A stretch of DNA of 64,000 nt, from assembly GCF_902652985.1 (NCBI RefSeq), contig NC_047015.1, positions 45,756,001-45,820,000 of the forward strand. Reading direction: 5' to 3'. The notes beneath the pieces are model-generated. The model had not been told where the DNA came from, did not search any database, and saw nothing but the letters and a program-made list of their open reading frames with translations. Shown in pieces: positions 18,954-62,317 of this stretch. Numbering within the stretch: position 1 is the first letter of the stretch; each line of letters opens with the position of its first letter. The position numbers and the translations under genes are program-made. The DNA is from Pecten maximus (lineage: Eukaryota).

Positions 18954-20274
18954 ATGCACGGAAAACTGATGTTTATGGTATTCTTAGTCTGGCTATTTGG
19001 GAGAAATGTGACTCCTGTTATGCTTCCGGAAGCACAAAGACTGTACAAACAACTGTTTCGGAACTACACTGTAGCACTTCGGCCAGTTTTGAACCAGAGC
19101 AAAGCCGGTGGAGGTTCGTGTGTCCATGGGGATAATGTCCATTAACGACTTGGATGAACTATCGGGTACAATAACTCTGACTGTCATTTTTAATTCCGTT
19201 TGGAAAGAGGAAAGATTTACATGGAACCCTGAACATTGTGGTGGTCTGAAATCACTTACACTTCCTCAGGAATCCGTGTGGCTACCGGAAATGGTTCTCA
19301 CCACGGCAGCGGACGACACCGTACATATATCAACAAAGGGTAACTTCAAGGTGCGCGTGGACTTCACGGGTCTGATGAATTGGTGGAGGATTGGGATCAT
19401 TAAGTCGGCATGTGTAGCGGATGTGACGTATTTTCCGTACGATGTTCAAAAATGTCATGTGGTCCTCTCTCCTTTTGGATACCAGACAGAGGAAATCAGC
19501 CTAGTTCCAATGCGGGACACCATTTCGTTTGACCATTTCTCTAACAACGGTCAGTGGAAAGTGAAATCTTCGTCGGTGGAGGTAAATTCCCTCCCGATAA
19601 CAAAAGACAATCTGGAGGATAGTGTGGGATTTGCCAATTTTACTATAGAGATTGAGAGAAAGCCATTATACTTCGTTGTGTCAGTGATTATCCCTATAAT
19701 GCTTCTGACCCTGCTCAACCCATGCGTGTTCGCTCTCCCTATAGAGTCCGGTGAACGTGTGTCCTTCGCTATAACTGTACTATTATCATTCGCGGTATTT
19801 GAGTCCATGGTGAGCGACTACATGCCCCAGGGATCTGATCCTATGTCATTGCTCTCTCTATTCCTGGTGATAACGTTGATGGACAGCACTCTTATCACCA
19901 TAACAACCATCATGCTTCACGCCACATATCACAAGGATGAGGCCGACGCTATACCGGAAGTGCTAGTTCATATGCATCTCTTTATTCGGCAACGTACACT
20001 GTCGCGGAAAATATCTCCAATCTGCCCTAGGCCTGAAGAGACGATATCCGAATTACCGGAGATGGATAGTAAGTCAAAGTATGGACAATCTGAAAAATCA
20101 GAATCTAAACTGGCTGCCAGTGTCAACGATATCAAGACCGAAATCCGTTCAGGTCCCGAAGAGGCCGCTGTGAATTGGCGACAAATTACGGAAACGTTTG
20201 ATCGTGTATTCCTCACAGTGTTTCTGTTGTTTAATTTCCTGTTTTGTTTGGTGTTTTTCCTGTATATATCTTAG
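18954..20274 (+). CDS. Cys-loop LGIC / nAChR-like non-alpha subunit (gene 1); intronless; 1-bp frameshift at ~19101-19103 (assembly error or pseudogene); ~439 aa if corrected
   Basis: Signal peptide MHGKLMFMVFLVWLFG, then ...LFRNYTVALRPVLNQSK. Removing one A from AGC-AAAG-CCG joins this to ORF 19108-20274 (PVEVRVSM...). Cys-loop CVADVTYFPYDVQKC, M1-M4, M2 entry SGERVSFAITVLLSF. Confidence 0.9.
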
Positions 20275-23200
20275 TGAGTTTACTAGACATTTCAGCTGAG
20301 CACTAAAGAGGCTAAGTAAGACTTTCTAGCGACACATCTTTACAATAATTCAGTGAGCCGTTTAACGGAGTTCGACACTCAGCAGAGGGACAGAGGGACA
20401 ATTATTGCTATTATTATTATTATTTTTTGGGATTTTTTTTGTAAATACAAGTAAAAAACAGACTGGGTGCACTGGAATTTGAGTTTTGGTGAATGAGTTG
20501 GGTATCCAAATTATACTTCATCAGAAAAAACAACAACACTATTTATTATTTATTTTCTCACTATGTTGAGCGTAGAACTCTTCGTATGTCGTGTAAATAC
20601 AATTTTATTGACTTTAGACTTATAATGTGACAGAGCCTCTGATTGTATTACATCCTGTGTGACATGTCTGACAGGAATGTTGTGTCTCGCCTAGGGTCGA
20701 CTCCATGTGGAGGTATCACAGCCGCCAATCTACCCACTACAATGACCTGTGTCCGTGTCCGGTATGAGTTGGCGTCCCGTAAAAAGGTGAGGAGCCGGGT
20801 TCAAGCCCATCATGTACCTAATCTGATGTTTTAAATGCCTCGTCACATCATGATATCGAGATATTTTTCATTTGAAGCATCACATTAGCTGCAAACCTGT
20901 TTGAATACGGATTCCCGCATATCCGGGTGTTGCTTTCGGGAAAGATAATTCGTACCAGATACTGATACTCATTTTTTTCTTGTCATAACACTAAGCCTAT
21001 GAGTAGGTTTATTGCATGGTAGCTGTCTTTATATCAGTACCAAACCTAATTATAAACGTTTACCAGCGACACTCGACGACTTCACGCTTTGTGACGAGTT
21101 ACTGAAATACTGTTGTGACGTATATCAATTCATCGTTGATATAGCTACTCTTGTAAAATAAAAATAACATTTTTTGCTAATAAGAAGTTTTCGTTTTCGC
21201 TTTAGTATCCAATAAGGATTGCAGGAGACATTAAATTTGTGTTTGGGTGGAATTATGGGAAACCAGAGCATTGAGAAACAAGTGTGCTTTCTTTCCATCA
21301 CGGATATAGCAGTTTTCTTGGAAGTGGGTACAGAGTCTGATTCTGATTCATAAAATTGACATACAGTTTAGTTTCTTTGTACCGGAGTAAGTTATGTTAA
21401 ATGTGAAGGGAAGTACTCCAGACGAGACAATAAAACGTGATTTTTTTTGTTGTATATAAAAAGGGGATGTGTAGTCTAAAAGGCAGACTTTTCTACAAAC
21501 ATATATTCTCATCCGTTTGAGTTACACAGCTACATGTATTGTAATAAAGCCTTTACGCTATGAGTCACGGTTGCCGTTCAAGTTTATGTAGTTATAAGCC
21601 ATTGTTTAGGTAGGATCGCCCCTATATCACTAGTTACCTCCCTTTGCCCGTGTGTGACAAGGCTGTTGCGATCCCTAGACCTTGACTAAGGGTAGGTAAC
21701 TCGGATATGCCTTCTACTCCGAAGCAGTAAAAATTATGAATATCTCTATGTTCGCGTTTCAAGAAGGAGCATCCTATCAAACGGCTCGGCCAGCTGCCAA
21801 CAAAGTTTTAATATACATCGTATTGGCAAATACCGTCGTATACATTTTTTTTATATACATCGTATACATGATAAAGGCGGTGTAGTGTGTGCAAAATTGG
21901 ACCATTTAGTACTGAAATTTCCCTGAAATAAAGTTTTCTAGCGTAAATTTCGACAGAGGTTTTCATACATGATTATCCCACTTGGTACATGCATGCCGAT
22001 ACATCAGGTGAAGACGTTGTGGCAAGTATCGAATTAAGGAACAATGTGTGACCTGTATTTGACCTTTGACCTCAATCACTGAAATAAAGATTTTCAGAAC
22101 ATATAACAGCCATAGTAGTTATAAATTGACTTCAAAATAAGCATGCAAGTAAATAATTAGAGTTCACAGTATCATATTCCAAAATTGGAAAATCGCAACA
22201 TATGTTTGGCTGTCGATACGTTGAGACCTAAGACTTTATTGGAAGTGAAACCTGGTATTACAGTAACCGTATTCATTTGACTTGACATAAAGTCCCAGAA
22301 TGCTGGTTTCCCGCGGTGTATTTCGGCAATATTCCATGTTAAGACTTTGTATGAAGGTACCTTCACAGTACTATACATACTATTTTGGGAACAACGTTGA
22401 CCTTGACCTCAAATACTGACGTACAGGTTCATCATGGTCAACAAGCTGGGGTCATCACGATCTGTAGGCTGTATACTTCAAGCAAAAATGTAATTACCAT
22501 TTATTGACTAACAATAGTTCTAATTAACGAACATAAACATACTGTACATATGTTGTTTAAGTTCGTACTTCAGTTAAATATTGATTCCGATCACACACCC
22601 CACATTACTTAACAACCATTAACTCCAGAACGTTCTCTTATCTAATTGAGATATTATTTTAACTTAATCATGCATGCGGTCATCAATAGGTTTTTCGCTG
22701 CTCTGCGGCCTGGAAAATGTCCAATTTGAATGACGTATTGTAAGTTAAAGCACAGGTCAGAGTCGTTAATTGGTTTGATGTTTTTAGATATCGACCAAAA
22801 TGGTTCAGCACACAATGGTGCCGTGGAGATACACATCTCACGGACGAGGTTGGCTAACTCCAGGCAATAATATTTCGGTGTCACCACGACACCATGTACC
22901 CAATGTAAAATGAGCTTTCCTGTTCAGGTCTGAGATCGGTTCTGATTTTTGATCCCAGAACATATAGGTCATCTCAACATCTTATACAACACATGGACGT
23001 ACCCCTGTACTGTCCTTACGGCCGTCTATTGTAGTGATACTACCGATATTGATAAATCGATACGTCAGTAGATCTCCGAGTATGTGTTTTAACTCGATGT
23101 GTACTATTAAGTAATATACGTTTTAATTTTCGAAAATATTTGATAAAACAAATTTATTCCAGATCGAGATCGTCTTAATCATATTAATTGATGTAATCGT

Positions 23201-24868: not shown

Positions 24869-26731
24869 CTAGAGGCGTGCCGCAAGTGGAAAGAGAAAGA
24901 ACGTAGAAATAAGCACGTTAACAACCAGATAGGACAACAGGAATATTTTATCTAATGTTAACGAAACCTGTTTCCATGTGAGTTGTTTACTAGATAATTC
25001 CTGTGATATCCGGTTCCGGTCTCGTCCTGATTTACGAGACTGAGCTGATCCTTGTTTTTTACTGAGACCATCTGTATCTTTTGCATTGTCTGAAATCACA
25101 ACACAAGTCTGTGCGTGTTTGTTTTGTTGTTGACTTTTGCCACGAGACCGGATACTGGAAGTCCGCCATTGTTTATCACTGGTGAAACCCTTGGCCTCGT
25201 TTTCATTACTATCGTTTTCATTTCTCCAGTGAACACTCTTTTGACTTGACCTCCTGACATTGACGTTGGATATTTTGCCTGTATTTTCATCGGGATGCAA
25301 AGTAGAATTTCCTAGCTGTCCTTCATGTATGTTTAAAGTCTCATTGTCTTTATGAAGCACGGGCGAAACCTTCCTTGCACGTTTGACCTTGGAGGAGCTG
25401 GAGGAGCTGGACGAGCCTGAAGACTCGCTGGTCTGTCTCGCTAAACCAGTAATCTGTCTCTCAACACCGACATCGCTCTGTTCCGACACCTCTATCGAAG
25501 TTTGTGATAGAATGGATACTTGACGATTAATTTCTGGATACATATACCTTATGTCCGAAGCCTCGTTATCCGGACAACAAGGACTCCTTTGGGGGTCAAT
25601 AATGATGCTATTCCTCCGTTCAGGATCCGGAGGTGCTACCGTTATGCGGGTAATATGGCTACACTTTTTCTTCCTTTTGGTTTTGGTTTTTCTAATAATA
25701 CCCGATATCAGTATATGTAAGTATTTTGGAATTTTGTCATTGTTTGTCTTAAAATAGAGGGATACTGATAAAATGGCTGACACAGAGACGAAGACACTGT
25801 ATATCATCTGCCACATGAAGAAGTAGCCGAGATAGGTCATTGTGTCCGAAGCCCTCGGTAGGAATGATATGGTGTATATAAAATAGAACGACAAAGTTAT
25901 AAATCCTATCGAGACCATCTGTCCGCGACCTTCCTCTGCAGGAATCATGAAGGAACACGTGATCAATACCGTTATCAGAAGGACAGGAAGGAGCAGATTG
26001 ATGACGAAATACACAGGTTTACGTGACATTTTAATCTCAAAATGAATAACGGAACTGTGTTGTGAAAGCGTATTATACACTTTCGTTTGATCAACGTTCC
26101 ATTCTGTATTAGTATTTAGAGAGACAATATCAATGTTTCCCTCACCTTTTGTAGTACCGAGCTTTACTTCACTTGGTTTGTATCCCACAATTCCAAAGGA
26201 AATATTGCACGTTTGAACGTCAAATGGAAAGTACTGAACATTTGTCGTGCACAACGACTTCGTCATTATCATAGGCTTCCAAGTCATTTCACCACTATCG
26301 TTAATTATAATGACGTCACTTCCGGAATTTATCACGCCAGTATCTTCGAATGGATTGGTGACGACAACTGGAGGAATCCAAACGTCTGAAGATCTCATTC
26401 TTATGTTCTTTATGTCCTTGAAGCTTTCCGAATAGTTTTTCCACGATAAAAGTCTGTCCGTCCATTTTATCTCTAAATGTCCGATTGTGTGAAGGGCACC
26501 TAAAACACAATCCAGTTCAGTGACGGAGTGAAGTGTCAAACTCGCTCGAACGTCCACTTTGTCTTCTAAATTACTGACCGGACGGATATGTACACTATAC
26601 TTTGAAAAAATATCGGAATCGAAGAAACTTAGCATGGTTTGACTAGTCACTGTTGTAAGGTTGTCGGCTGAAATACAGGAGCTCAGGACGACACATGTCA
26701 GCAGAATTGACGAGTACAGCGGTGCAGGCAT
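24869..26731 (-). CDS. Cys-loop LGIC / nAChR-like subunit (gene 2); intronless; ~620 aa (alternative ATG at 26761); very long Ser-rich M3-M4 loop
   Basis: Signal MPAPLYSSILLTCVVLSSCISA; YSVHIRPV; WIPPVVVTN; Cys-loop CTTNVQYFPFDVQTC; RKPVYFVINLLLP (M1); WKQVSLTLDKIFL (MA/M4). Confidence 0.93.
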   Translation of the reverse strand: MPAPLYSSILLTCVVLSSCISADNLTTVTSQTMLSFFDSDIFSKYSVHIRPVSNLEDKVDVRASLTLHSVTELDCVLGALHTIGHLEIKWTDRLLSWKNYSESFKDIKNIRMRSSDVWIPPVVVTNPFEDTGVINSGSDVIIINDSGEMTWKPMIMTKSLCTTNVQYFPFDVQTCNISFGIVGYKPSEVKLGTTKGEGNIDIVSLNTNTEWNVDQTKVYNTLSQHSSVIHFEIKMSRKPVYFVINLLLPVLLITVLITCSFMIPAEEGRGQMVSIGFITLSFYFIYTISFLPRASDTMTYLGYFFMWQMIYSVFVSVSAILSVSLYFKTNNDKIPKYLHILISGIIRKTKTKRKKKCSHITRITVAPPDPERRNSIIIDPQRSPCCPDNEASDIRYMYPEINRQVSILSQTSIEVSEQSDVGVERQITGLARQTSESSGSSSSSSSSKVKRARKVSPVLHKDNETLNIHEGQLGNSTLHPDENTGKISNVNVRRSSQKSVHWRNENDSNENEAKGFTSDKQWRTSSIRSRGKSQQQNKHAQTCVVISDNAKDTDGLSKKQGSAQSRKSGRDRNRISQELSSKQLTWKQVSLTLDKIFLLSYLVVNVLISTFFLFPLAARL

Positions 26732-27580
26732 CGAGAACCTGTGTAGTTGTCCTCCCGACATCAACACAATAAAATGGCAAAGCAATTAAAAGAGGAGGGC
26801 ACCTGTAGGGTGACGCAATTTTAAATTTCCATCCTTTAGTTTGATAACATAAGCAGTGAGATTGTTCATTGTAAATAATGAGGTCAGACAGAAGTTCGAA
26901 GCCATAATTATTGTGTATGAATGGTGTCCCTTACAGGTGTAGGATCCAACACCCTAAAGCTCCTCCGTGTTTACAAAACCCCAGGCATGTTCTATTATGT
27001 GACGTCACATAAACACCTTTCTCCTGCTCCGCCCGAGCGGATAATTCGTTAGGTGATGTGTGGCTAATGTCTCGGGCTCTACAGGTTTACATTGTTGATG
27101 AAAACCTACCAGGTCCACAAAGGTCGATTAAAAGTGAAGATATGGAGTTATCATTTCATCACCGGGCGTTTCGGGTATAATAAATGTATTTTTGATCCAA
27201 GCTGAACAATCTAGATCTAGATAAATGATACGCATGTACGGGTGGGTATACACAGCGTAAGGGGAAGTGGTTTTTTCTCAGGTGTTAACCTGCTACTTTT
27301 AATTATGTGGTAGGTTTAGAGAATACTGGGAAATATTAGAGTGAAACGAATAAAGAATACTGGTAATATTTAGATTAATGGCGAATAAAGAATATTTCTA
27401 GGGAGTATCGGAATAACTGCAAATAAACAATACTACTCGGGAATACTACTAAGGAATATTAGTATAATGGTGAATAAAGATTTCTTGGTGACATTTAAGA
27501 TAATGCCAAGATTAAGATACTGGTATATATGATATTTGGAATGCTATCAGAATGTACATATATATAATAATGATAAGATA

Positions 27581-27735: not shown

Positions 27736-27807
27736 TAATATCAGTAGTAAAATTCCCACAGTAATCCAGACGATTTTTCTCGCCACGTATAGCGACAAAA
27801 AAATACT

Positions 27808-31302: not shown

Positions 31303-33060
31303 TCATTCCAGGCCAGCTACAACAAGTGGATACATGAAGAAAACAGTAATACCCAACGAGAGGAAGAAAAAGAATATGAAACTGAAACCGTCCAAAGCTC
31401 CGCCCACCATCCTCCACGTTATCCCTCTGATGTCTCGGTCATCCACTGGTGCCTGGATACTGTCCACTTCGGCGTCGCTGTTGTCGTCATCATCGTCGTT
31501 GTCGATCATGTCTGTCACCGCGTTCTTACTTGTCTTCCTTTTGCTGCACCATTTTTTGCATTTCCGGCATGTCATGAAGGCGACAAGATGGCGTACGCCC
31601 TCTGGGGGCGTGGCTTCCTCGTCTTGATGGTAGACCCTCAATATCAGAATAGTTGCTATAGTGATAAGGGAACTAACCATTAGCATAAGGGTCAAGAAGT
31701 AACACAACAGTGACATTGGTTCAGAGGCTTTGGGCAAGTTTTCGGCCACCATCGTCAAAAACACTGCAAATGTTAAGAACGCCGTGATGGCGTAACCCAC
31801 GCGTTCACCACAGTCAGCCGGAAGTAGAAACACTAGACCATTGAGAAGTCCAATGATGAGGATTGGTATAATCATATTGACGAGAAAATAGCCCGGTTTA
31901 CGGGCCAGATTTAAGGTAAAGACAACATACGAGACATCGGCTATAACGGTACTCATCACCGAGGTTGTCTCCAACGACCACTCCACATTCTCCATGTAAA
32001 GGGACATGTCGATCTCGTTTGACGAATTCAAGACGATCTGAAAAAATGAATAAATAAAAGGATTTTTATTTAAAGAACAAAGAAGGATATACATGTACAG
32101 TTCAATACATTTATCTATATTACAAATAAGTGATATATTTAGTTTTTTTAACCACTTATAAGGTTATATTTATTGAGGTACGTGAACTATTATTCACTTA
32201 TTTAGTTATTCTGATTGGGGTGCGTGAAATATTATTAACTTATTTGGTAATTCTGATTTGGGTGCGTGAAATATTATTAACTTATGTGGTAATTCTGATA
32301 TTGGTGCGTGAAATATTATTAACTTATTTGGCAATTCTGATATTGGTGCGTAAAATATTATTAACTTATTTGGTAATTCTGATTGAGGGCGTGAAACATT
32401 ATTCAATTATTTGGTCATTCTGATTGGGATGCGCGAGATATTTATCATTTTGGCCATGTATTGATTGAGGTGCGTGAGATATCTATCAATGGCCGTATCA
32501 CTCACCTGATCTTCCGTGTAGCCCAGTGCAGCAAATGTGATGTTGCATGACTGTCTGTCGAAAGGATAGAGTGTGACGTCAACGCCACAAGCCGTTCGGG
32601 CGACTAAGCCGACGTTCCATAGGACATTGCCTTCGTAGTCGGTCCGAATCTTGTATGTGGAGTCCCCGAGTTCCGCCAGTGAATCAACAGAATTTGTGAG
32701 AGTAACCGGAGGTTTCCAAAAGGTTTCCTGTGGAAGCAGAATGCTCTCCATGGGGTTGTCATCTACAAGATTCCACGTAAGGAGTTCATTTTTCCATCGG
32801 ATTACACCGAGACCGACTATTTCTAAGTTTCCATTCAACTCATCAAAATCGGTTACTCCAACCAAAGTAAACTCAATGTCAACGTCCAAGTGCTCTATTT
32901 GAAAGATCTTCGGGAAAATTTTGTTATTGTAACTTCTGAATGGTTCATTGTCCAGAAATTCTTTGAAATTCGTACTTGTAGCACACAAAACACTTTCAAA
33001 ATTCCAAAAACTAAGGCAGAATAGGACTACAATTCCATAGAGGCGAAAAAGGCTCGCCAT
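31303..33060 (-). CDS. Cys-loop LGIC / nAChR-like non-alpha subunit (gene 3); two exons, 33060-32506 and 32037-31303; 429 aa
   Basis: Exon 1: MASLFRLYGIVVLFCLSF signal, Cys-loop CGVDVTLYPFDRQSC, ends GYTEDQ at donor CAG|GTGAGT. Acceptor TTTTTTCAG|ATC; exon 2 encodes IVLNSSNEIDM...M1-M4 with M2 CGERVGYAITAFLTF. Phase-0 intron 32038-32505. Confidence 0.93.
32160..32480. repeat. 42-bp minisatellite inside the gene 3 intron, ~7 copies
   Basis: Unit ATTCTGATTGGGGTGCGTGAAATATTATTAACTTATTTGGTA. Confidence 0.85.
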
Positions 33061-33199
33061 TTTGAATTCCCTACCCAAACGTCATAACATGTATGGGTAT
33101 TTGAAGATACTTTACATTAAACAAAACAATCATCGAATCAAATACACTGGCTATATGAACATACATGTGGGTGATTCAACTTTGAACAAGTATCACGAA

Positions 33200-36467: not shown

Positions 36468-38455
36468 CTACTCGTCTGTTTCCGTGGAGGTCGCCGCTAA
36501 GGCCAGGGGGATCAGGAATACACACGATATAACGACAGTACCAAAAACAAACAATGAGAAGAAAAACCCGTCCAGTGTACCACCGACCACCCTCCACGAG
36601 ATACCTTTGATGTCGGCATTGTTTGGTTTGGGTTTCTTCGCCTCTGTCTTCCGTTTTCCTTCTTCGTCAGAGTCCTCGTCTTCGGCAGAGTCCTCATCTG
36701 ATGACGATTCTTCCTCCTCGACCTCCTGGCCAGGTTTTGGTTCTTCGATGGCCTCCAGTTTTTGTCCACACCACTTCTTGCACTTTCTACAAGTAATGAA
36801 GGCCACTACGTGTTTGAGCCACATGGGTACCGGGCTGTCGTCATCTTGGTGATAAACTCGGAGTGTCATAATCGTGATCACAGTCGATAAAGCGCTCATG
36901 ATCAACATCAACGTCAGAAAGAAGCATAGTAGAGACATTGGCTCTGACGATTTCGGAAGGTTGTCAGATACCATGGTCAAAAATACAGCAAATGTGAGAA
37001 ATGCTGTGATGGCGTACCCGACGCGTTCACCTGAGTCAGCCGGAAGTAGAAACACGAGACCGTTGAGCATGCCGAGAATAAGGATTGGGATAATCATGTT
37101 GACAAGGAAATAGCCGGGTTTCCTGGCTAGATTGATGGTGAAGTCGAGGTAGGAGGCAGATGCAGAAGAAAGTGCCTCCACGGAGGTACCGGTCAGAGTC
37201 CATTCAACGTTAGGCATGAAAAGAGCTGTGTCCATCTCGGAGCTGGTAGTATTAAGCCGAACCTGAAAGAGTAGATAAATTGATGGTGTTTAGTCTCACC
37301 TGTGAGTGTAAACTACCCAAATAAATACCCAGAGTTGATGGTGTTAAGTCCCACCTTTGACAGTAAACTACCCAAATTAGTACCATGAGTTGACGGAGTT
37401 TTGTCACATCTGTGACAATAAACTACCCAAATTAGTACCATGAGTGGATGGAGTTTTGTCACACCTGTAACAATAAACTACCCGTGTTGATGATATAAGC
37501 CAAATATGAAACAGTAAATAATCTAAAAGTAAGAGACGCCAGCTTCAGAGGATATCACAGACCAGATATTGACAAAGAGAGGATATATTACATACCGGAA
37601 GTGGTCACAACGAGGATATTGCAGACTAGATGTGGTGGCTGAGAGTATATTACAGACCGGATGTGGACACAGCGCGGATTCTTAAGACCGGATGTGGACT
37701 AAGAGAGGATATGATAGACTGGATGAGGACAGAGACAGGCTGTTACGGACCGAATGCTGACATAGAGAGAATATCACAGACCGGATGTGGACACAAATAG
37801 GTTCTTACAGGCCGAATGTGGAAAAGGATATCACCGACCGGATTAGATATATGCATTCAATATGGAATAGTATCAAGCTATAAAACAGACATATGTATGA
37901 GTTTACCTGTGTGTCGGTGTATCCCCACGGCGTAAAGGAAATCTTGCAGGATTGTTTATCGAAAGGATAATAGGACACGTCCACGGAACACGCCGACTTG
38001 GAAACAACGCCAATTTGCCATTCACAAACGCCATCTTTGTTTATCCGGATGTTGTAGGAATTGTCGCCCATTTCTGTGAGGGACTCTACAGAGTTGGCAA
38101 GGACCAAGGATGGTCTCCAGAAATTGTTTTGCCCCATTATCACCTCTTGCATTGCGTTGATGGAGCTGTTCCACATTATGAGTTCATTGGTCCATGTTAA
38201 CACTGTATACCCCACGAGATCGAGGTAGCCGTTCAGTTCATTTAATTGTGTTATGGCTACCAGGTAAAACTGAACATCTACTTCAACTTTTTCTGTTTGT
38301 GAATTCCGTGGAAAAATCTTCAGATTGTATGTACTAAACGGGGGATTGTCTATCCACGACCGAAAATGTGCTGCTGTTTGAGCATGAGTTATATCCACAC
38401 TCCACAGGAGAGCCAGAAGGACAATTGTACACGAAGACAGTCTCAGCGAACCCAT
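36468..38455 (-). CDS. Cys-loop LGIC / nAChR-like non-alpha subunit (gene 4); two exons, 38455-37907 and 37262-36468; 447 aa
   Basis: Exon 1: MGSLRLSSCTIVLLALLWSV signal, Cys-loop CSVDVSYYPFDKQSC, ends GYTDTQ at CAG|GTAAAC. Acceptor CTTTCAG|GTT; exon 2 VRLNTTSSEMD...M1-M4 with M2 SGERVGYAITAFLTF. Phase-0 intron 37263-37906. Confidence 0.93.
37280..37830. repeat. Two degenerate tandem repeats inside the gene 4 intron
   Basis: Recurring AAACTACCC...GAGTTGATGG blocks (~37280-37490) and ACAGACCGGATGTGGAC blocks (~37590-37830). Confidence 0.6.
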
Positions 38456-41117: not shown

Positions 41118-41280
41118 NNNNNNNNNNNNNNNNNNNNNNNNNNNNNNNNNNNNNNNNNNNNNNNNNNNNNNNNNNNNNNNNNNNNNNNNNNNNNNNNNNN
41201 NNNNNNNNNNNNNNNNNNNNNNNNNNNNNNNNNNNNNNNNNNNNNNNNNNNNNNNNNNNNNNNNNNNNNNNNNNNNNNNN
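41118..41280. other. Assembly gap (163 N)
   Basis: Run of N. Confidence 1.
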
Positions 41281-49587: not shown

Positions 49588-51051
49588 TCATGCTCTGGAG
49601 AAGAGCGGAACAAGAAACACGCTTGAAAGTGCCATACTACCAATACTAAATGCAACGAAGAAGAATTTGTCAAAAGTCTGTGCCACGGTTTTCCACGTAA
49701 CACCATATCTAATTTCCGGTTGCTGATCTTCCTCTTCATCACTGCTCTCATCATCCACGACGACTGCCTGCGTCGGCTGGGGCGGTGGCTTCTTCAGCTC
49801 ATCTAGAGGGTCCGCTGCGGCATCCATTCCCAGTCGACTTGGACCGGCGCTAGGCGCCATGCTCGAGGGTGGACGACTTTTGTCTTCTGGTCCTGGTGTG
49901 GTCACCGGCTTTGGTCGCGGTGGTGGGGCCTTAGGTTCGGGCTTCTCTGGGTTTTTGTACTTTTCTCTACATATACGAAAAGTCATTGTGGCCACTAATG
50001 CAGCGACGTAGAATGGGACGGTGGATTCTTCGTCCTTGTCGTGAATGCGGAGGGTAAATATGGTAACAAGAGTTGACATGCTGCTCATGGCTAACATAGA
50101 TGATAGATAATAGCTCAACATAGCTAGCGGTGCGGATGTCTTTGGCAAGTTTTCAGCTAATATGGTCAAAAACACGGCAAAGGTTAGAAATACATTAACA
50201 GCAAAGCCTATTCTTTCTCCAGCATCTGCAGGTAATACGAAAACGAGGCTGTTAAGGAGCCCGACTAGTACGAGTGGACTGATCATGTTCACAATGAAAA
50301 ACACTGGTCTTCTTTTCAAATTCAGAATATACCTCCTGAACGGTTTGTTAGACGAGTTGTAAGTTGTAACAGTTGAACTTTCGAGATCCCATTCCTCGTT
50401 TTCATCGTAGTATTCAGTGTCCAGTTCTGTGGCCGAATTGTCGAACATGACCTCCTCTGCTGTGTAATCCCACATGGTCAGAACAAGTTCACAAGCCTGG
50501 CTGTCGAATGGATAGTACGTAGCGTCGACCGAACATCCTGTCGCGGTGGTCACTCCGGCTCGCCAGTAATTCTTGGCTGCGGCCAGAATGGTTTTCACGT
50601 GATAGTTCTTGTCAAAAATAGGTTTTAGTCCCTTTACAGAATTAAATATAGTGACGGGCGGGACCCAGACATCTGTCTGTAGAGAGTCCATCTCGTAAGG
50701 TTTGTGATGGCCGGGAATATACTTTGCGGTTAGATATTCGTCCCTCCAGATAACTGTAACTTTTGCCATTAAGTTCATCACGCCGGATACCTCGTCCAGA
50801 TCGGTAATTTTATACAACTGGAAAGTGACGTCAACAAATATTGTCTCATTTTGCATCAAGCGAGGGAAAACTCGACTGTCGTAAATAGTCGAATCAAACA
50901 GGTCAGTCAACATAACGGCAAAGTCCGACGCCGTTGGAACCGGAATGGTCTGACACAGGGTACAGTTGGACTCGATCAGGAAGGAGCCTCCGGACACTCC
51001 AGAGACGGCTGTCCCTATCAGCAGCAGGACCCGTAAACACATAATCTCCAT
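49588..51051 (-). CDS. Cys-loop LGIC / nAChR-like non-alpha subunit (gene 6); intronless; 487 aa from ATG 51051; Pro-rich M3-M4 loop
   Basis: Signal MEIMCLRVLLLIGTAVSGVSG (the 85 aa upstream in the ORF track are probably not translated). YDSRVFPR, Cys-loop CSVDATYYPFDSQAC, M2 AGERIGFAVNVFLTF, WKTVAQTFDKFFF. Confidence 0.94.
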   Translation of the reverse strand: MEIMCLRVLLLIGTAVSGVSGGSFLIESNCTLCQTIPVPTASDFAVMLTDLFDSTIYDSRVFPRLMQNETIFVDVTFQLYKITDLDEVSGVMNLMAKVTVIWRDEYLTAKYIPGHHKPYEMDSLQTDVWVPPVTIFNSVKGLKPIFDKNYHVKTILAAAKNYWRAGVTTATGCSVDATYYPFDSQACELVLTMWDYTAEEVMFDNSATELDTEYYDENEEWDLESSTVTTYNSSNKPFRRYILNLKRRPVFFIVNMISPLVLVGLLNSLVFVLPADAGERIGFAVNVFLTFAVFLTILAENLPKTSAPLAMLSYYLSSMLAMSSMSTLVTIFTLRIHDKDEESTVPFYVAALVATMTFRICREKYKNPEKPEPKAPPPRPKPVTTPGPEDKSRPPSSMAPSAGPSRLGMDAAADPLDELKKPPPQPTQAVVVDDESSDEEEDQQPEIRYGVTWKTVAQTFDKFFFVAFSIGSMALSSVFLVPLFSRA

Positions 51052-52480: not shown

Positions 52481-52764
52481 GTTCATTGTGGGTGTTTATG
52501 ACATTATAGATATTGCCCCGAGGGAGGGGATATATACCGTACTATATGTAGCGTTAGTCTGTCTTTTTTTCTAACCCTGGAATATTAATTTGCAAAGCGT
52601 TTGCTTTTTATTTTTCTCACATTTTGTTTGAAAGGGAGGATTCCGTATTGTTAATAATTGTATCACATCAGGTGAATTTTCTCCCTATCCTGACACATAT
52701 AGGCCCGAGGATAGGGGGTTTATCTCATAATTAACTGTGATACCGTGGCTAATATATCTCAGCA

Positions 52765-55700: not shown

Positions 55701-55830
55701 ACCTGAGCACACCACTCTATATTGTCCTGAGGGTGGTGATTTCTACCTCAGCACACCACTCTATATTATCTTGAGGGTGGTGATTTCTACCTGAGCACAC
55801 CACTCTATATTGTCCTTAAGGATGAGAGTT
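52765..55830. repeat. 44-bp satellite, ~70 copies
   Basis: Unit CTCTATATTGTCCCGAGGGTGGTGATTTCTACCTGAGCACACCA. Confidence 0.96.
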
Positions 55831-56322: not shown

Positions 56323-57679
56323 TTACATTGTGGCTGCTAAAGGCACGAGGAAGAAGAACGTGATGAGGGCATTCCCAGCAATAAACACGAGGAAAAAGAA
56401 AAAGTCCAGTGTAGCTGAGATAAGTTTCCAATCCACTCCGTATTTACCTTTGACGATTTCCTTTTCTTCGTTTTCCTCGTCCTCTCCCGCCTCCTCGTCG
56501 TCCGGTAATGGCGCTTTTTCGTCTACGCCGGGGTCAGCACCAGGGTCAATCATGTCTAAGGGTTCATTTTTCGAATCAAGAGGTTCTGGAGTTTTAATCG
56601 CAAATATCTCCATTTCATCTTCGTCATCGTCTTCGTCCTTACACACTTTACAGTTTAAAACAGCGACAATAGTAGCGAGTTTATCCGGTATCCTTTCCTC
56701 CTCCTCCGTGTGGAAGATCCTGAGTGTCGTGATTGTGAACAGCGCCGTTCCTGCACTAATGCAAGTCATTATCATTAGATACACACAGAGGATGGAGAGA
56801 GGTTCTGACGTCCTTGGCAAGTTCTCAGAGGTCAAGGTCAAGTACACTGCGAACGACATGAATGCCGTGATAGAATACGAGATCCTTTCCCCTGTCGCTG
56901 GTGGGAAGTAGGAAGACAATAGCGTTAAGGAGACTGAGAATAAGAATGGGGAAAACCAGGTTAGCGAGAAAGAAAAGTGAGCGCCTGGCAAGTGTAACGG
57001 TGTACGTGGCATAATTGATGTTGTTAATATCTTCCATCTCTAGGATGGTCGTTTCGATACTCCATTCCTCATTCTCCCGGTAGTTTTCAAGATTTACGGA
57101 AGAGGACGATAAGACAAAGCGCACTTCTGTGTTTTTGAACCCCCAGTTTGTGAATGTTACCTTGCACTTTTGCTTGTCAAAAGGGAAATTCGATGCGTCG
57201 ACATTGCACCCAGTCTTCAGCACGATCCCAGGCCACCATTCCATAGCACCAGTGGTGGGGTTGCAGCGAATCTTGTTGGTAATATCGCCTACAACTTTAA
57301 TTTTGGACACAGAGTTGAATATTGTCACTGTTGGAAGCCATATGTTGGAGGAAGTGATGAGAATTTCGCTGATGTTACCATGTACTGCCCAAGCATACTG
57401 GTCGCCAATAAGCTGGTCAGTCCAAGTAATTTTAAGGATACCGATCAACTCAAGCGTCCCTGAGACCTCGTTGAATTCCTTTATGGACGAGAGATAGAAT
57501 ACCATGTCAACATCTATGATGTCGGTCTGAGTGTCACGAGGGAAAACCTTACTGTTGTACGCGCCGTCTGTGATGGTGGTTTTGTAAAACTCCAAAAGCT
57601 GTGTGTAATTCGCTCCCAGAGTCCCGTGTACGACCAGAAACGCGACACATGTCAATAACATCCAAGTTCCGGTTGCCAT
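56323..57679 (-). CDS. Cys-loop LGIC / nAChR-like non-alpha subunit (gene 7); intronless; 1-bp frameshift at ~56903-56905 in the M1-M2 linker; ~451 aa if corrected
   Basis: ORF 57679-56825: MATGTWMLLTCVAFLVV signal, Cys-loop CNVDASNFPFDKQKC, M1 ...AIVFLLP. Deleting one C from CTT-CCC-ACC gives LPPATGERISYSITAFMSF and joins ORF 56323-57012 (M2-M4). Confidence 0.9.
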
Positions 57680-58629
57680 ATTGGTGGTACCTCAAATATA
57701 CTTATATCTGTTAATAAATAAATCAGGACCGCTTGCGTTGTTATTATACACAATCTGACGAATGCGAGACTTGACCAAAGCGAGGCTCATCCATAACGAG
57801 ACTCTGGTGGTCGATGTATCGGTAGTTATTGCTTTGTTTTAAACTCCTCGACTGGTACATCTGACAGACTATTAAAACAATAGCCATTTACAGAGGATCT
57901 CAGCAGGGTTCAAACACTTTGATATGTATATTGCTCTGATATTCAATACTGATAAAATGTTTGTTATATTTAATCAACACGAGGTAGCTTTACGCGTGAC
58001 TTGAGATACCCTACCGAAGTGATTACACTATGTTAATCTATAGGCGGTAATAGCTCAATTAACTTATATGTAATTCCGTAAAGGACATAATTTACATACA
58101 AAACATTCATAGCGTCAATTATACAGATGTGTGTAGAAATTTTAGCAATGTTGAAAATTGCCGGGAAAAATGCCACCTTTGTTAACATTGTTCTAGAAAA
58201 ATTTGTCATTATTAAAAAAATTAGGCACTAAAACATACTAAATCGTAGATTTCTTATTGTATTTCAGAACTTGAAATGACATATATTGTATTAAAATACA
58301 CATAAAGCACTGAAGAAACTGTTTACAGTGTTACAAAATGGTTTGAGAAAAAAAAGGTGTCGATTTTGTCACGTGTAAACACCACCATGTAAATCAATAT
58401 ATATATATATATACTTTCATTTTCATTTTAATTTTAAATCCTTCTTTTATTATTTTTCAAAAACCCACACTCCGATAATAACAGCATCTCTAACTAATAA
58501 TTAAGTAAAACTACGTGACAAAAATAATCACGGGTAGTCATAAGGTCACTGACAAAAACATAAACCTGAATGAATTACCTCACTGCGATAGAAGTAGTGA
58601 CAATGACATTACGATTGGTGTCGTTATGC

Positions 58630-59812
58630 TATTGACTTTTGGTGTCTCAATGATGTGACTTTTGATGTCTCAATGATATTGCTTTTGGTGTCTCAATGAT
58701 ATGGCTTTTGGTGTCTCAATGATGTGACTTTTGATGTCTCAATGATGTGACTTTTGGTGTCTCAAGGATGTGGTATTTGGTGTCTCAATGATGTGACTTT
58801 TGGTGTCTCAATGATATGGCTTTTGATGTCTCAATGATATGGCTTTTGGTGCCTCAATGATGTGACTTTTGGTGTCTCAATGATATGACTTTTGATGTCT
58901 CAATGATATGGCTTTTGGTGTCTCAATGATGTGACTTTTGGTGTCTCAATGATATGGCTTTTGATGTCTCAATGATGTGACTTTTGGTGTCTCAATGATA
59001 TGGCTTTGGGTGTCTCAAGGATGTGACTTTTGATGTCTCAATGATATGGCTTTTTGTGTCTCAAGGATGTGACTTTTGGTGTCTCAATAATGTGACATTT
59101 GGTGTCTCAATGATATGACTTTTTGTGTCTCAAGGATATGGCTTTTGATGTCTCAAGGATGTGGTATTTGGTGTCTCAATGATATGACTTTTTGTGTCTC
59201 AAGGATGTGGTATTTGGTGTCTCAATGATATGGCTTTTTGTGTCTCAAGGATGTGACTTTTGATGTCTCAAGGATGTGGTATTTGGTGTTTCAATGATGT
59301 GGCTTTTGGTGTCTCAATGATATGGCTTTTGATGTCTCAATGATATGGCTTTTGGTGTCTCAATGATGTGACTTTTGGTGTCTCAATGATATGGCTTTTG
59401 ATGTCTCAATGATATGGCTTTTGGTGTCTCAATGATGTGACTTTTGGTGTCTCAATGATATGGCTTTTGATGTCTCAATGATGTGACTTTTGATGTCTCA
59501 ATGATATGGCTTTTTGTGTCTCAAGGATGTGACTTTTGGTGTCTCAATAATGTGACATTTGGTGTCTCAATGATGTGGCTTTTGGTGTCTCAAGGATATG
59601 GCTTTTGATGTCTCAAGGATGTGGTATTTGGTGTCTCAATGATATGACTTTTTGTGTCTCAAGGATGTAACTTTCGGTGTCTCAAGGATGTTACTTTTGG
59701 TGTCTCAATGATGTGGCATTTGGTGTCTCATGGATATGACTTTTTGTGTCTCAAGGATGTGGTATTTGGTGTCCCAATGATATGACGTTTTGTGTCTCAT
59801 GGATATGACTTT
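58630..59812. repeat. 23-bp minisatellite, ~50 copies, degenerate tail to ~60150
   Basis: Unit GGTGTCTCAATGATGTGACTTTT. Confidence 0.94.
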
Positions 59813-60321
59813 CGTTGATGGAACATTTGGTGACATATCTCAATTAATGTATCAGGGACGTTGCATTTGGTAACTCGGGGATTTGGCTTTTGTTATTTCA
59901 GGGACATAAATTTTGTGTGGTTTTTGTGTCAAAATGACAATTGATATTCGTGACATAAGGACGTGACTTTCGTAATAATTACATTGACTTTTGGTGTCAC
60001 CAGACCATGACTTTTGCTGTCAAAATGATATTGAATTGTGACATTACAAGAACGTTGCTGTTGGTGTCATGATGATATTGACGTTTTGTGTCACAGTGAC
60101 ATTGGAATCTTGTGTTACACGGATGTGACTTTTTGTGATACAATGACACGGTCTTTTCACAGATCACACATTTGTCTTTCGTTTTACCTGTACAAGATAT
60201 CTGATTCACCCCCTAAGCTTTCTCTATTGACTCTAAGGTTATGACAGATAGCACGCGCTGGCTACAATACAATGACGTCACTTCGACAATTCGATCACGT
60301 CACGTCGAGTTCAGGGTTAGT

Positions 60322-60520
60322 ATTGTTTAACGTCCTATCAACAGCAAAGGTCGTTTAAGGACGACCTATCCTGTGTGAGCGATGCGTGAGGGGCGTGTAT
60401 GAGTGTTTGATTTGGGAGGCTGTGGTATGTTTGTGTTTGTCTTCTTGTGATAGCGCTGTACTGATGCCGACTATACAATGCTACATCACTGTTCAGTATA
60501 CTGCCGAAGACACCCAGCAG
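60322..60520 (-). mobile_element. SINE 3' portion (5'-truncated)
   Basis: Reverse complement ends ...CCTTTGCTGTTGATAGGACGTTAAACAA, the same tail as the insert at 62928-62981. Confidence 0.6.
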
Positions 60521-60937
60521 GTATAGGTATGAAGTATAGGTATCAATATTATTCTAACAGATATTATCTAAAAATACTGCTTTACATCGTCACACAAAGT
60601 TCCAATTTACTGCCCAACTAGGAATGACATTTGTACATACAGAATTCAACAACCACTCAGATATATGTTTATTTACAAACACCAATATTACAGTACAATA
60701 ACAAAATGTTATCGACGTGTCAGGTAAATATGATTTGTAACCAGTCAAGGCTTGACTATTCTTGGTCAAATTAGAAACATTCGAATTCACATATAAATGA
60801 ATTCTTCAACTAATGGTGAGGGTGGTGATTTTGTTCATTACACACATATAATAATGCGTTTCAAATGTTAATTTCGGCGAAAGGCTTTAAAAATATCACA
60901 CAAATCCTCTCCATTCATTGATAGTGTTACTTGCACC

Positions 60938-62317
60938 TTAATAATACTGGACAACAAGAGGGACAATGAAAATCGCCAGCAATGCAATCTGACCACCAAG
61001 GAAAAGAACGAAAAAGAAATGGTCAAGCGTCCGTGCGACCGTGACCCAGCTTACTTTGGGTACATAACATAGTTCGCTAAAGTCCATGTCAACTTCCTCC
61101 TCCTCTTCAATCGTCTTCCATTTCTGGTTGGGAGCTCCAAATTTGATGCCTTGTGGGAGCTGATCTAACGCCTTCATTTCAAACGTGTTGCCGTGGATGT
61201 TAATCCACGTGTGTGGGTCCTTCTGTTTCAATGTCTGTTTGGCGGGATGAACCTTCAGGTTCTTGTTGGGATTCTGGCACACCTTGCAACACAAACATGC
61301 CACAAACGTCATCACAATGTGTGGTACTGGGATCTCGTCATCTTTGATATGCCAACGGACGGTGAAGATGGTGACCATTGTTGTGAGGCCTCCGAAAGCG
61401 ACTTCACAAACCACATACCACGACAACAGTGACATGGGATCGGATGATTTTGGAATGTTATCACCAATGAGAATCAAAAACACAGAGAATGTTAGGAAAG
61501 CCGTCATGGCGTAGCCTACCCGTCCTTCCGGTACCGGGATGTAAAATGAGAAGACGGTTAGAACCCCCAGTAGGAGTACGGGGATTATCATCACAATAAT
61601 ATACCACATCGGCCGGCGCAAGAGGTCAACTTTAAAACTGACCATAGATTTACTATCAATGGTAGAAGATAGTATACTTGTGGATTCGAGATTCCACACC
61701 AAGTTCTCCTCATATAAAGTAGTATCGATATCGCTTCTGGTGGTAACTAATCTAATCTCACTCTGATGAAAGTCCCAGGGTATGATGTCAATAGAACAGT
61801 TCTGAGAATCAAATGGGTAGTTCAGTACATTCACGGAGCAACCGGCTTTTAAAATGACCGGAGGAGACCACGTGGTCTGACCGTTATATCGGACCGTTAC
61901 CTTGTTGTATTTGTGGCCTAGTACCTTCAGAGAGTCAACCGCATTGTAGAGAGTGATGGGCGGGTGCCAGACGTCTTCCCTGTTCATGATGAAGCGGTTC
62001 ACGCCGTCATAGTCGTTTGGATCCCACGTGAGCTGGCTTGTCCAGCTAATGTCCAGTATACCCACAGTAGCCAGGGTTCCGGCCAGCTCGTCAAACTCGG
62101 TGATTGCTCTGATGGAATAATCTATGGTGACCACGAGGGTATTGCTAGTGTCATCTGTCGGTATCACATCGTCCTGGTATGACGCTAGAACTGCCGAGTA
62201 CCAAGTTCGTACCTGACTGGAGGAAACGTTCAATGTCCCTGCACCGGATACCGTACCGACGAGACTGATCCACACTAATAAAGACAAAAATGGCGTTAAA
62301 CTCACACCTTTGTTCAT
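60938..62317 (-). CDS. Cys-loop LGIC / nAChR-like non-alpha subunit (gene 8); intronless; 459 aa
   Basis: Signal MNKGVSLTPFLSLLVWISLVGTVSG, WHPPITLYN, Cys-loop CSVNVLNYPFDSQNC, M2 PVPEGRVGYAMTAFLTF, WVTVARTLDHFFF. Confidence 0.95.
   Translation of the reverse strand: MNKGVSLTPFLSLLVWISLVGTVSGAGTLNVSSSQVRTWYSAVLASYQDDVIPTDDTSNTLVVTIDYSIRAITEFDELAGTLATVGILDISWTSQLTWDPNDYDGVNRFIMNREDVWHPPITLYNAVDSLKVLGHKYNKVTVRYNGQTTWSPPVILKAGCSVNVLNYPFDSQNCSIDIIPWDFHQSEIRLVTTRSDIDTTLYEENLVWNLESTSILSSTIDSKSMVSFKVDLLRRPMWYIIVMIIPVLLLGVLTVFSFYIPVPEGRVGYAMTAFLTFSVFLILIGDNIPKSSDPMSLLSWYVVCEVAFGGLTTMVTIFTVRWHIKDDEIPVPHIVMTFVACLCCKVCQNPNKNLKVHPAKQTLKQKDPHTWINIHGNTFEMKALDQLPQGIKFGAPNQKWKTIEEEEEVDMDFSELCYVPKVSWVTVARTLDHFFFVLFLGGQIALLAIFIVPLVVQYY

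What the first reader, a model, noticed from the sequence alone, without database searches (positions are those of the whole stretch)
18954..62317. Tandem cluster of eight intron-poor, ACh-site-deficient nAChR-like channels: candidate chemosensory receptor array
Seen: all eight have the Cys-loop and four TMs, but none has the loop-C YxCC motif. In the seven minus-strand genes the segment from the beta9 Trp to the pre-M1 R-K/R-P/S is uniformly 29 aa, about 6 shorter than in alpha7 as I recall it, so loop C is truncated; gene 1 has a 37-aa version. The loop-B Trp position varies (PFGY, IVGY, ALGY, PWGY, PRGY, MWDY, NWGF, PWDF), and the loop-A Tyr survives only in gene 8. Known: bivalves have large expansions of intronless nAChR-like genes, and cephalopod chemotactile receptors are clustered, intronless nAChR derivatives that lost ACh binding. 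Inference: this is an orphan-ligand channel array, possibly a parallel chemosensory system able to form combinatorial heteropentamers.
Basis: partly seen in the sequence, partly recalled or inferred. Interest (0 to 1): 0.78.

Follow-up and report, generated by a model that had tools for sequence, protein, structure and literature searches.

The report
Scallop array of non-alpha nicotinic-like channels
This is a real, old and well-conserved row of eight nicotinic-receptor-like ion-channel genes in the king scallop that lack the classical acetylcholine-binding loop, but it is one ordinary example of a gene expansion already described in bivalves, and nothing here shows that it serves smell or taste.

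Summary
Eight Cys-loop receptor genes lie at 18954-62317. All have the C-x13-C loop and M1-M4, and none has the loop-C Cys pair. The beta9-Trp to pre-M1 segment is 29 aa in the seven minus-strand genes and 37 aa in gene 1. The N gap is intergenic.

Corrections:
- Genes 1 and 7 are frame-broken as assembled. Contigs of three DNA runs and one RNA-like run all lack one base at the gene 7 break, so that break is an assembly artefact. Gene 1's break is untested.
- Genes 3 and 4 share one phase-0 intron.

The features are not special to this array. In this genome 0 of 115 sampled single-frame paralogues have the Cys pair, and their segment is 25-34 aa. Of 19 exon-type loci, 17 have it.

The array is ancient. 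Synonymous sites are saturated between the paralogue pairs tested. Six of eight genes have 69-92% identical counterparts, five of them in named scallop genera.

Bivalve tandem arrays of intron-poor nAChR genes are published, and the chemosensory idea is already in print. The chemosensory role is untested here because run labels were coded. The scan noted this kind of cluster at least eight times elsewhere in this genome.

The parts
18954..19106 (+). Gene 1, first frame: start codon, signal peptide and N-terminal helix (51 codons before the frame break)
   Evidence: ORF 18954-19145 and the DNA. A Pinctada counterpart, P0014, has the same region in one frame with the rest.
19108..20274 (+). Gene 1, main frame: beta1 to M4. 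Offset by +1 from the first frame within 19093-19108. The break was not tested with reads.
   Evidence: Pfam LBD 4e-37 and memb 6.6e-15. 85% identical to Argopecten and Ylistrum proteins. The public P. maximus model P0013 starts at an internal Met and lacks M4.
24869..26761 (-). Gene 2: single open frame with ATGs at 26761 and 26731. Very long Ser/Lys-rich M3-M4 loop and an atypical M1-M2 loop/M2 (E-G-R order, no -1' Glu).
   Evidence: The membrane-domain match is below Pfam's cut-off (24.1 against 28.1 bits).
32506..33060 (-). Gene 3, exon 1 (signal peptide to loop B)
   Evidence: Donor cag|GTGAGT at 32505. 100% match to the first 185 aa of public model P0055.
32038..32505 (-). Gene 3 intron, 468 b, phase 0. 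Overlaps the 42-bp tandem repeat at 32172-32442.
31303..32037 (-). Gene 3, exon 2 (beta8/9, short loop C, M1-M4, stop)
   Evidence: Acceptor ttttcag| before 32037. 100% match to the last 244 aa of P0055.
37907..38455 (-). Gene 4, exon 1
   Evidence: Donor cag|GTAAAC at 37906. 100% match to the first 183 aa of public model P0048.
37263..37906 (-). Gene 4 intron, 644 b, phase 0, at the same codon position as in gene 3. Holds a 55-bp tandem repeat.
36468..37262 (-). Gene 4, exon 2
   Evidence: 100% match to the last 264 aa of P0048
39233..40534 (-). Gene 5: single open frame, 433 aa
   Evidence: 69-72% identical to Argopecten, Mizuhopecten and Ylistrum proteins.
41118..41280 (.). Assembly gap (N). 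Intergenic, between gene 5's start and the 32-bp satellite.
49588..51051 (-). Gene 6: single open frame, 487 aa from the Met that opens the signal peptide. The mechanical ORF runs up to 51306.
   Evidence: Equals P0059. 88% identical to a Ylistrum protein.
56323..57679 (-). Gene 7: one gene. The assembly carries one extra base at 56903-56906, in the M1-M2 loop, which splits it into two overlapping ORFs.
   Evidence: All four runs laid lack one base there. RNA-like contigs lie on the gene.
60938..62317 (-). Gene 8: single open frame, 459 aa. Keeps the loop-A Tyr and loop-B Trp. M1-M2 loop has E-G-R instead of G-E-R.
   Evidence: RNA-like contigs cover 60761-62317. 81% identical to P0002.

Best explanation
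The locus is an ancient tandem array of eight intron-poor, non-alpha subunit genes of the nicotinic/5-HT3 branch of the Cys-loop receptor family. It lies on chromosome-scale contig C1 of Pecten maximus and is kept across scallop genera. It is one of many such arrays in the published bivalve nAChR expansion.

Each gene encodes a signal peptide, a ligand-binding domain with the Cys-loop, and M1-M4. Five such subunits are expected to form a cation channel. That expectation is inferred from the pore-lining motifs: G-E-R before M2 in six genes, E-G-R in genes 2 and 8, and a 9' Leu in seven. No current was measured.

Loop C is six residues shorter than in alpha subunits and lacks the Cys pair. The loop-A Tyr is gone in seven genes and the loop-B Trp in four. 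The subunits' own (+) face therefore cannot hold acetylcholine in the classical way (inferred). The (-) face Trp is kept in all eight.

The most likely working model is that these are functional channel subunits gated by something other than acetylcholine at their own (+) face. They may work alone, with each other, or with alpha-type partners. The ligand and the tissue are unknown. The seven minus-strand genes arose by local duplication long ago. Gene 1 is a more distant family member that sits beside them.
For: Family: Pfam LBD and membrane domains in all eight. The best solved relatives are human nAChR alpha-6/alpha-4/beta and 5-HT3A (E 1e-35 to 2e-40).

Species: P0013, P0048 and P0055 are named Pecten maximus and lie on a contig of 60,076,705 b, which is the length of C1.

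Intact genes under constraint:
- pS is 0.76-0.80 against pN 0.29-0.48 for the four paralogue pairs tested, yet the frames stay open.
- M1-M3 is 1058 of 1105 positions identical over 13 comparisons with counterparts from other species, against 308 of 393 for the loop-C segment.

Orthologues on shared contigs:
- Ylistrum contig of 4,039,350 b: counterparts of genes 1, 4, 5, 6.
- Argopecten contig of 51,162,219 b: genes 1, 3, 4, 5.
- Mizuhopecten contig of 893,135 b: genes 3, 4, 5.

Local origin: the seven minus-strand genes form an exclusive clade among 142 rows (UFBoot 87, SH-aLRT 47). Genes 3 and 4 are sisters (100/96) and share the intron.

Family-wide trait: the 123 intron-poor rows separate from the 19 exon-type rows at 100/99. 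0 of 115 sampled single-frame loci have the Cys pair, against 17 of 19 exon-type loci.

Transcription: contigs of run X6 (labelled 'RNA?', a guess) lie only on genes 7 and 8, with zero depth over 57723-60122. X6 also holds 22% of the words of 31303-40534.

Literature: bivalves have 99-217 nAChR genes that are often intronless and sit in tandem arrays of up to 8 and 12 genes. Only 33 of 132 are alpha-type in C. gigas (PMC6896357, Results read).
Against: - No ligand, current or assembly was tested. Cation selectivity rests on motifs only.
- Gene 1 is frame-broken as assembled, and I could not lay reads on it. The public models of its counterparts in Argopecten and Ylistrum also start at the internal Met, so a real break is not excluded.
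- Gene 2's M2 and membrane-domain score are atypical.
- Support for the seven-gene clade is moderate. The alignment used for the tree includes the loop-C region.
- The RNA status of X6 is the tool's guess, backed only by the coverage pattern. Depth is low (2-9).
- Contig sharing in other scallops shows the same scaffold, not adjacency.
- Genes 2 and 7 were not searched for orthologues.
Confidence: 0.8

Rival explanations
1. Accessory or complementary subunits. The eight proteins co-assemble with alpha-type scallop subunits and contribute the (-) face or a structural position in ordinary acetylcholine-gated receptors, as vertebrate beta, delta or alpha-5/beta-3 subunits do.
For: The loop-D Trp is kept in 8 of 8; it is invariant as W92 of gene 8 across the 33 rows of A2. 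The pore motifs are those of cationic nAChRs. Vertebrate beta and delta chains are among the best solved matches. The genome holds alpha-type loci with the Cys pair that could be partners, 17 of the 19 exon-type loci sampled. The slow, one-to-one evolution fits a housekeeping synaptic role.
Against: At least 123 Cys-pair-less genes stand against about 17-19 alpha-type loci in the sample, which is far more accessory subunits than partners would seem to need. The loop-C segment is shorter (29 aa) than in any of the 19 exon-type loci (31-36 aa). PMC6896357 reports highest expression in gill and expression before the nervous system forms, in other bivalves.
Confidence: 0.2
2. One reading: a peripheral chemosensory receptor array parallel to cephalopod chemotactile receptors. 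It would be expressed in mantle tentacles, gill or larvae and gated by environmental chemicals through combinatorial heteropentamers.
For: The genes show loss of the classical (+) face, few introns and clustering, as described for chemotactile receptors (PMC11526382, passages; PMC13174522, sections 3.4 and 4.2). The ligand-binding loops evolve faster than the channel. Gene 8's loop-C segment is 52% identical to P0002 against 93% for M1-M3. A 2026 preprint reports a 'CR-like' clade that includes bivalves and raises this idea for divergent clades (PMC13174522).
Against: The diagnostic features are shared by all 115 single-frame paralogues sampled, so they say nothing specific about this array. 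There are no recent duplicates, and scallop genera keep single counterparts. Octopus receptors, by contrast, show lineage-specific expansion and diversifying selection (PMC11526382, passages). No chemotactile receptor chain is among the 60 best solved matches shown, of 98 for gene 8 and 224 for gene 5. Tissue of expression is unknown.
Confidence: 0.12
3. Decaying retrogene copies: some or all members are expressed or unexpressed pseudogenes left by retroposition and duplication.
For: Two of eight genes are frame-broken in the assembly. PMC6896357 notes that more intron-poor than intron-rich nAChR genes have little or no expression. Gene 2 has an atypical M2.
Against: Gene 7's break is absent from all four runs laid. 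The assembly shows three more single-base insertions within 2.3 kb against the three DNA runs. Frames of 429-620 codons stay open although synonymous sites are saturated. M1-M3 is 89-100% identical between genera.
Confidence: 0.05

Closest known systems
Bivalve intron-poor, tandemly arrayed nAChR expansion (Jiao et al. 2019, PMC6896357)
   Same: The host is a bivalve. The genes have none or one coding intron and sit in a tandem array of eight; arrays of 8 and 12 are reported in oysters. They are mostly non-alpha, with divergent ligand-binding loops. The genome holds at least 150 LBD matches out of 344 candidates.
   Different: Nothing of kind. This particular Pecten maximus array, its conservation across scallop genera and the shared intron of genes 3 and 4 are not described in what I read. 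The paper's supplements, which list genes, were closed.
Cephalopod chemotactile receptors (CRT1, CRB1 and relatives)
   Same: They are nAChR-derived, intron-poor and clustered. The acetylcholine-binding residues are lost. A pentameric cation channel is expected.
   Different: No shared ancestry was shown here, because no receptor sequence could be obtained. The scallop genes have conserved single counterparts rather than lineage-specific bursts. No sensory expression or hydrophobic ligand is known for them. The primary papers (PMC7605239, PMC10228259) are not held, so their features come from a review and a preprint.
Alpo4, orphan lophotrochozoan nAChR-like receptor of Alvinella pompejana (PMC10338036)
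   Same: It is a lophotrochozoan nAChR-like subunit without the loop-C Cys pair and responds to neither acetylcholine nor serotonin. That paper's phylogeny of 649 sequences already includes Pecten maximus.
   Different: Alpo4 keeps the aromatic residues of loops A, B and C (passages read). Seven of the eight scallop genes lack the loop-A Tyr and four lack the loop-B Trp. Alpo4 is not among the 60 best solved matches shown for genes 5 and 8.
Vertebrate non-alpha nAChR subunits (beta-2, beta-4, beta-1, delta, gamma, epsilon)
   Same: They have no Cys pair and a shorter loop C, keep the loop-D Trp, and have a cationic pore. They are among the best solved matches.
   Different: The scallop genes are intron-poor and number over a hundred per genome. 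Identity to any solved chain is low.

Membership tests
Cys-loop pentameric ligand-gated ion channels, nAChR/5-HT3 branch | Neur_chan_LBD and Neur_chan_memb domains | tested here: met
   8 of 8 have both. Gene 2's membrane match is below the curated cut-off.
Cys-loop pentameric ligand-gated ion channels, nAChR/5-HT3 branch | Cys-loop of two Cys 13 residues apart, and four membrane helices | tested here: met
   C-x13-C in 8 of 8. M1-M4 are shown by alignment and hydropathy.
nAChR alpha-type subunit | Vicinal Cys pair at the tip of loop C | tested here: not met
   0 of 8. There is a 6-residue gap against alpha-6.
nAChR alpha-type subunit | Aromatic residues of loops A and B on the principal face | tested here: not met
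   Loop-A Tyr in 1 of 8 (Phe in 3). Loop-B Trp in 4 of 8.
Bivalve intron-poor tandem nAChR expansion | Bivalve host; none to two introns; tandem array | tested here: met
   Pecten maximus names on P0013, P0048 and P0055. Six genes are single-frame and two have one intron. Eight genes lie in 43 kb.
Bivalve intron-poor tandem nAChR expansion | Falls with the genome's other intron-poor paralogues, apart from multi-exon alpha-type genes | tested here: met
   The split of 123 against 19 rows has support 100/99.
Cephalopod chemotactile receptors | Membership of the CR (or CR-like) clade | not tested
   No receptor sequence was reachable. None is in the 60 best solved matches shown for genes 5 and 8. 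That such chains are in the PDB copy is recalled, not shown.
Cephalopod chemotactile receptors | Expression in a peripheral sensory epithelium | not testable with these tools
   Run, sample and study names were coded. Only presence in one RNA-like run was seen.
Cephalopod chemotactile receptors | Gated by poorly soluble environmental compounds, not by acetylcholine | not testable with these tools
   This needs electrophysiology.
Cephalopod chemotactile receptors | Lineage-specific expansion with diversifying selection in the pocket | tested here: inconclusive
   There are no young duplicates, and scallop genera keep single counterparts. The loop-C segment does evolve faster than M1-M3 (78% against 96% identical).

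The most novel reading that the evidence does not exclude
The whole intron-poor clade without the Cys pair and with a short loop C has at least 123 sampled genes in this genome and a single origin apart from the alpha-type genes. It could be a bivalve family of ionotropic sensors for non-cholinergic, possibly environmental, ligands, evolved in parallel to cephalopod chemotactile receptors. Within it, this array would be a set of old, conserved 'tuned' receptors for cues common to all scallops, which would explain one-to-one orthologues and near-invariant channels alongside faster-changing binding loops.
Probability: 0.12. Interest if true: 0.7.

Novelty: new member of a known kind. Interest (0 to 1): 0.25.

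Why it matters
As it stands it matters little. The genes are already modelled in the public annotation and belong to a published expansion.

Three small things are useful:
- The 'acetylcholine-blind' traits that first-stage readers keep flagging in this genome are a clade-wide trait of more than a hundred genes. They cannot be used to single out any one cluster.
- This array is old and kept across scallop genera, with near-invariant channel helices. Its members are therefore real working subunits and good candidates for de-orphanising experiments.
- The assembly carries single-base insertions that mimic frameshifts, which should temper pseudogene calls elsewhere in this genome.

If any member were shown to be gated by an environmental ligand in a sensory tissue, it would extend the transition from neurotransmitter receptor to chemoreceptor beyond cephalopods.

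Tried and rejected
Haplotig check. I searched the own assembly with the DNA of genes 7 and 1 to find a second copy that might lack the frame breaks. Only the window's own copy was found.

Paralogue dN/dS. Synonymous sites are saturated, so no ratio could be given.

Structure route to chemotactile receptors. The ESM Atlas call only returned molluscan nAChR-like clusters.

Sequence route to chemotactile receptors and Alpo4. The solved-structure search shows only the 60 best rows, all vertebrate nAChR or 5-HT3A.

Tissue of expression. Run labels were coded.

Pseudogene reading of gene 7. Rejected.

A short intron at the gene 1 or gene 7 breaks. Rejected, because the two frames overlap within at most about 50 bases, too little room.

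Papers seen:
- PMC6896357: abstract and parts 1-2 of Results.
- PMC13174522: abstract, sections 3.4 and 4.2, and passages.
- PMC10338036, PMC11526382, PMC11682238 and 10.64898/2026.08.07.743245: passages only.
- The other papers: listing only.
- Supplements, which may list these very genes and clade assignments, were closed and not requested.

The claim that this array is not described in print rests on the searches only.

Rows dropped. Of the 142 non-window places, I did not fetch 8 (partial matches or matches with stops). The 194 candidates that one search did not score are not in the census.

Joined step left out. I searched and aligned genes 1, 3, 4 and 7 piece by piece and did not join exons or frames. 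The public spliced models P0048 and P0055 came from the tool.

Full report
**What is there.** The window is G000:C1:45756001-45820000 of a 918,306,378-base assembly in 3983 contigs. Proteins P0013, P0048 and P0055 match window genes at 98-100% and are named Pecten maximus. They lie on a contig of 60,076,705 b, which is the length of C1. An earlier follow-up in this scan also called the genome king scallop.

Between 18954 and 62317 there are eight genes of the Cys-loop receptor family. All eight match Pfam Neur_chan_LBD and Neur_chan_memb. The best solved relatives are human nAChR alpha-6, alpha-4 and beta subunits and 5-HT3A.

It is correct in every detail I could check.
- A script found C-x13-C in 8 of 8 and no CC in any ligand-binding domain.
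- The beta9-Trp to pre-M1 segment is 29 aa in the seven minus-strand genes and 37 aa in gene 1.
- Gene 8 aligned to chain 8zrn_A shows a six-residue gap at the loop-C tip that carries the Cys pair. An alpha-like sea-urchin protein (P0008) shows the same extra residues with CC.
- The loop-B Trp is kept in genes 4, 6, 7 and 8 and lost in 1, 2, 3 and 5.
- The loop-A Tyr is kept only in gene 8, with Phe in genes 5-7.
- The Trp that I take, from recall and from the Alpo4 passage, to be the loop-D Trp of the complementary face is present in all eight. It is invariant in the 33-row alignment A2.

**The gap.** N at 41118-41280 lies 584 bases beyond gene 5's start codon (40534) and 275 bases before a 32-bp satellite of about 201 copies at 41555-47990. 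No reading frame crosses it. I did not fill it or look it up.

**Gene models.**
- Genes 2, 5, 6 and 8 are single open frames.
- Genes 3 and 4 each have one GT-AG intron of 468 and 644 bases. It is in phase 0 at the same codon just after loop B. The exon pieces add up exactly to the public spliced models P0055 (185 + 244 aa) and P0048 (183 + 264 aa).
All searches and alignments were done piece by piece.

**Frame breaks.** Genes 1 and 7 are each split into two overlapping frames by a single base. For gene 7 I laid Logan contigs of three DNA runs from three samples and one RNA-like run on 56323-62317.
- All four lack one base at 56903 or 56906, exactly at the break. The two placements differ by a synonymous change in a Leu codon.
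- The assembly shows three more single-base insertions against all three DNA runs, at 57917/57918, 58166 and 58214.
- Gene 7 is therefore intact, and the assembly is prone to this kind of error.

Gene 1's break at 19093-19108 could not be tested, because read laying has one call. An artefact is the likelier reading, for two reasons. Its ligand-binding domain is 94-95% identical to counterparts in Argopecten and Ylistrum. A Pinctada counterpart also has the N-terminus in frame. However, the public models of all three scallop counterparts start at the same internal Met, so I leave it open.

**Is the array special in this genome?** No.
- The Pfam LBD model finds at least 150 matches out of 344 candidates, most in open frames of 400-500 aa and many in clusters.
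- I fetched 134 of the 142 non-window places and measured the same features.
- Of 115 single-frame loci, 0 have the loop-C Cys pair. Their segment is 25-34 aa (29 aa in 28 loci, 31 aa in 35 loci), and 86 keep the loop-B Trp.
- Of 19 loci that match only as a late exon of multi-exon genes, 17 have the Cys pair and 16 have a 35-aa segment.
- A maximum-likelihood tree of 142 rows separates the 19 exon-type rows from the 123 intron-poor rows with support 100/99.

**Origin and age.**
- In that tree the seven minus-strand genes form an exclusive clade (UFBoot 87, SH-aLRT 47). Genes 3 and 4 are sisters (100/96). Gene 1 falls elsewhere, weakly with paralogues at 32.5 Mb and 25.0 Mb of C1 and 28.2 Mb of C2.
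- The paralogues are only 27-36% identical to gene 5.
- Synonymous differences are saturated even between genes 3 and 4 (pS 0.79, pN 0.29-0.37).
- Six of eight genes have close counterparts elsewhere, shown in the table below. Genes 2 and 7 were not searched.

| Gene | Identity to counterparts | Species |
|---|---|---|
| 1 | 85% | Argopecten, Ylistrum |
| 1 | 53% | Pinctada |
| 3 | 84-91% | Argopecten, Mizuhopecten |
| 4 | 84-92% | Ylistrum, Argopecten, Mizuhopecten |
| 5 | 69-72% | three genera |
| 6 | 83-88% | Ylistrum and one unnamed |
| 8 | 81% | unnamed |

- The counterparts share contigs within each species, which fits a conserved array but does not prove adjacency.
- Between genera M1-M3 is 89-100% identical, against 52-90% for the loop-C segment.
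- Gene 8 is the extreme case. Its loop-C segment is 52% identical to P0002, while its M3-M4 loop is 97% identical.

**How it probably works.**
- The pore region reads as a cationic nAChR pore. G-E-R precedes M2 in genes 1 and 3-7, with Leu at 9'.
- Genes 2 and 8 have E-G-R instead, a change kept in gene 8's counterparts.
- With a truncated loop C and missing aromatic residues, the subunits' own (+) face cannot form the classical acetylcholine pocket. The (-) face may still be usable.
- I therefore rate 'functional cation-channel subunits with a non-classical or unknown ligand' as most likely. 'Complementary partners of alpha subunits' is the main rival.

**Expression.**
- Run X6 (labelled 'RNA?') has contigs only on gene 7 (five pieces) and gene 8 (three pieces, reaching 177 bases past the stop).
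- It has zero depth over the 2.4 kb between them.
- It also holds 22% of the words of the stretch with genes 3-5.
- This shows low-level transcription in one sample of unknown tissue. It cannot speak to a sensory role.

**Comparison with what is known.**
- Jiao et al. 2019 (PMC6896357, Results read) describe 99-217 nAChR genes in bivalves. Many are intronless or have 1-2 introns and sit in tandem arrays of up to 8 and 12. Only 33 of 132 are alpha-type in C. gigas. Expression is highest in gill, and the authors suggest binding to diverse ligands.
- The Alpo4 paper (PMC10338036, passages) already includes Pecten maximus in a 649-sequence tree.
- A 2026 preprint (PMC13174522, sections 3.4 and 4.2) reports a 'CR-like' clade that includes bivalves. 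It proposes that divergent nAChR clades may be ionotropic chemosensors.

Both the kind of locus and the chemosensory hypothesis are therefore in print. The first-stage scan has noted the same kind of cluster at least eight times elsewhere in this genome. One follow-up reached the same verdict.

**Verdict.** The feature is real, confirmed and conserved. It is a new member of a known kind and of low interest. The chemosensory reading remains an untested hypothesis, at about 0.12.

Noticed in passing
window 56903-56906, 57917-57918, 58166, 58214: The assembly carries single extra bases that are absent from the contigs of all three DNA runs laid. One of them mimics a frameshift in gene 7. Apparent frameshifts elsewhere in this genome may be artefacts too.
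   Followed up: partly
window 60315-60500: A short element just downstream of gene 8 has word depth up to about 13,600 in DNA runs and 216 in the RNA-like run, with many alternative joints. It looks like a very high-copy dispersed repeat.
   Followed up: no
window 60938-61300 (gene 8, M3-M4 loop): The intracellular loop of gene 8 is 97% identical to P0002 and still 52-66% identical to P0003 and P0004. It is more conserved than the ligand-binding domain, which is unusual for this family and suggests a conserved intracellular partner.
   Followed up: partly
window 24869-26761 (gene 2): Gene 2 has an M3-M4 loop of about 265 residues rich in Ser, Lys and Arg. Its pore helix is atypical, and its membrane-domain score is below Pfam's cut-off.
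   Followed up: no
window 41555-47990, 52761-55816, 27805-29713, 58636-59812: Long tandem arrays fill most of the space between the genes. They are a 32-bp unit x 201, a 44-bp unit x 70, an 18-bp unit x 103 and a 46-bp unit x 26. The 32-bp array has a GC skew near -0.52.
   Followed up: no
window 12415-12744 (-): An open frame here reads like a fragment of a reverse transcriptase of a non-LTR retroelement. That is my reading of the translation; no family scan was run.
   Followed up: no
G000:C1:42443914-42507641: Another cluster of single-frame paralogues lies 3.3 Mb upstream on the same contig. Its LBD matches stop at profile position 146-182 and it has varied loop-B residues. This is probably the array of earlier finding s1-789103.
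   Followed up: partly
P0011, P0012, P0013 (counterparts of gene 1): The public models of gene 1 and its Argopecten and Ylistrum counterparts all start at the same internal Met and lack a signal peptide. The P. maximus model also replaces M4 with unrelated sequence. These are likely annotation errors.
   Followed up: partly
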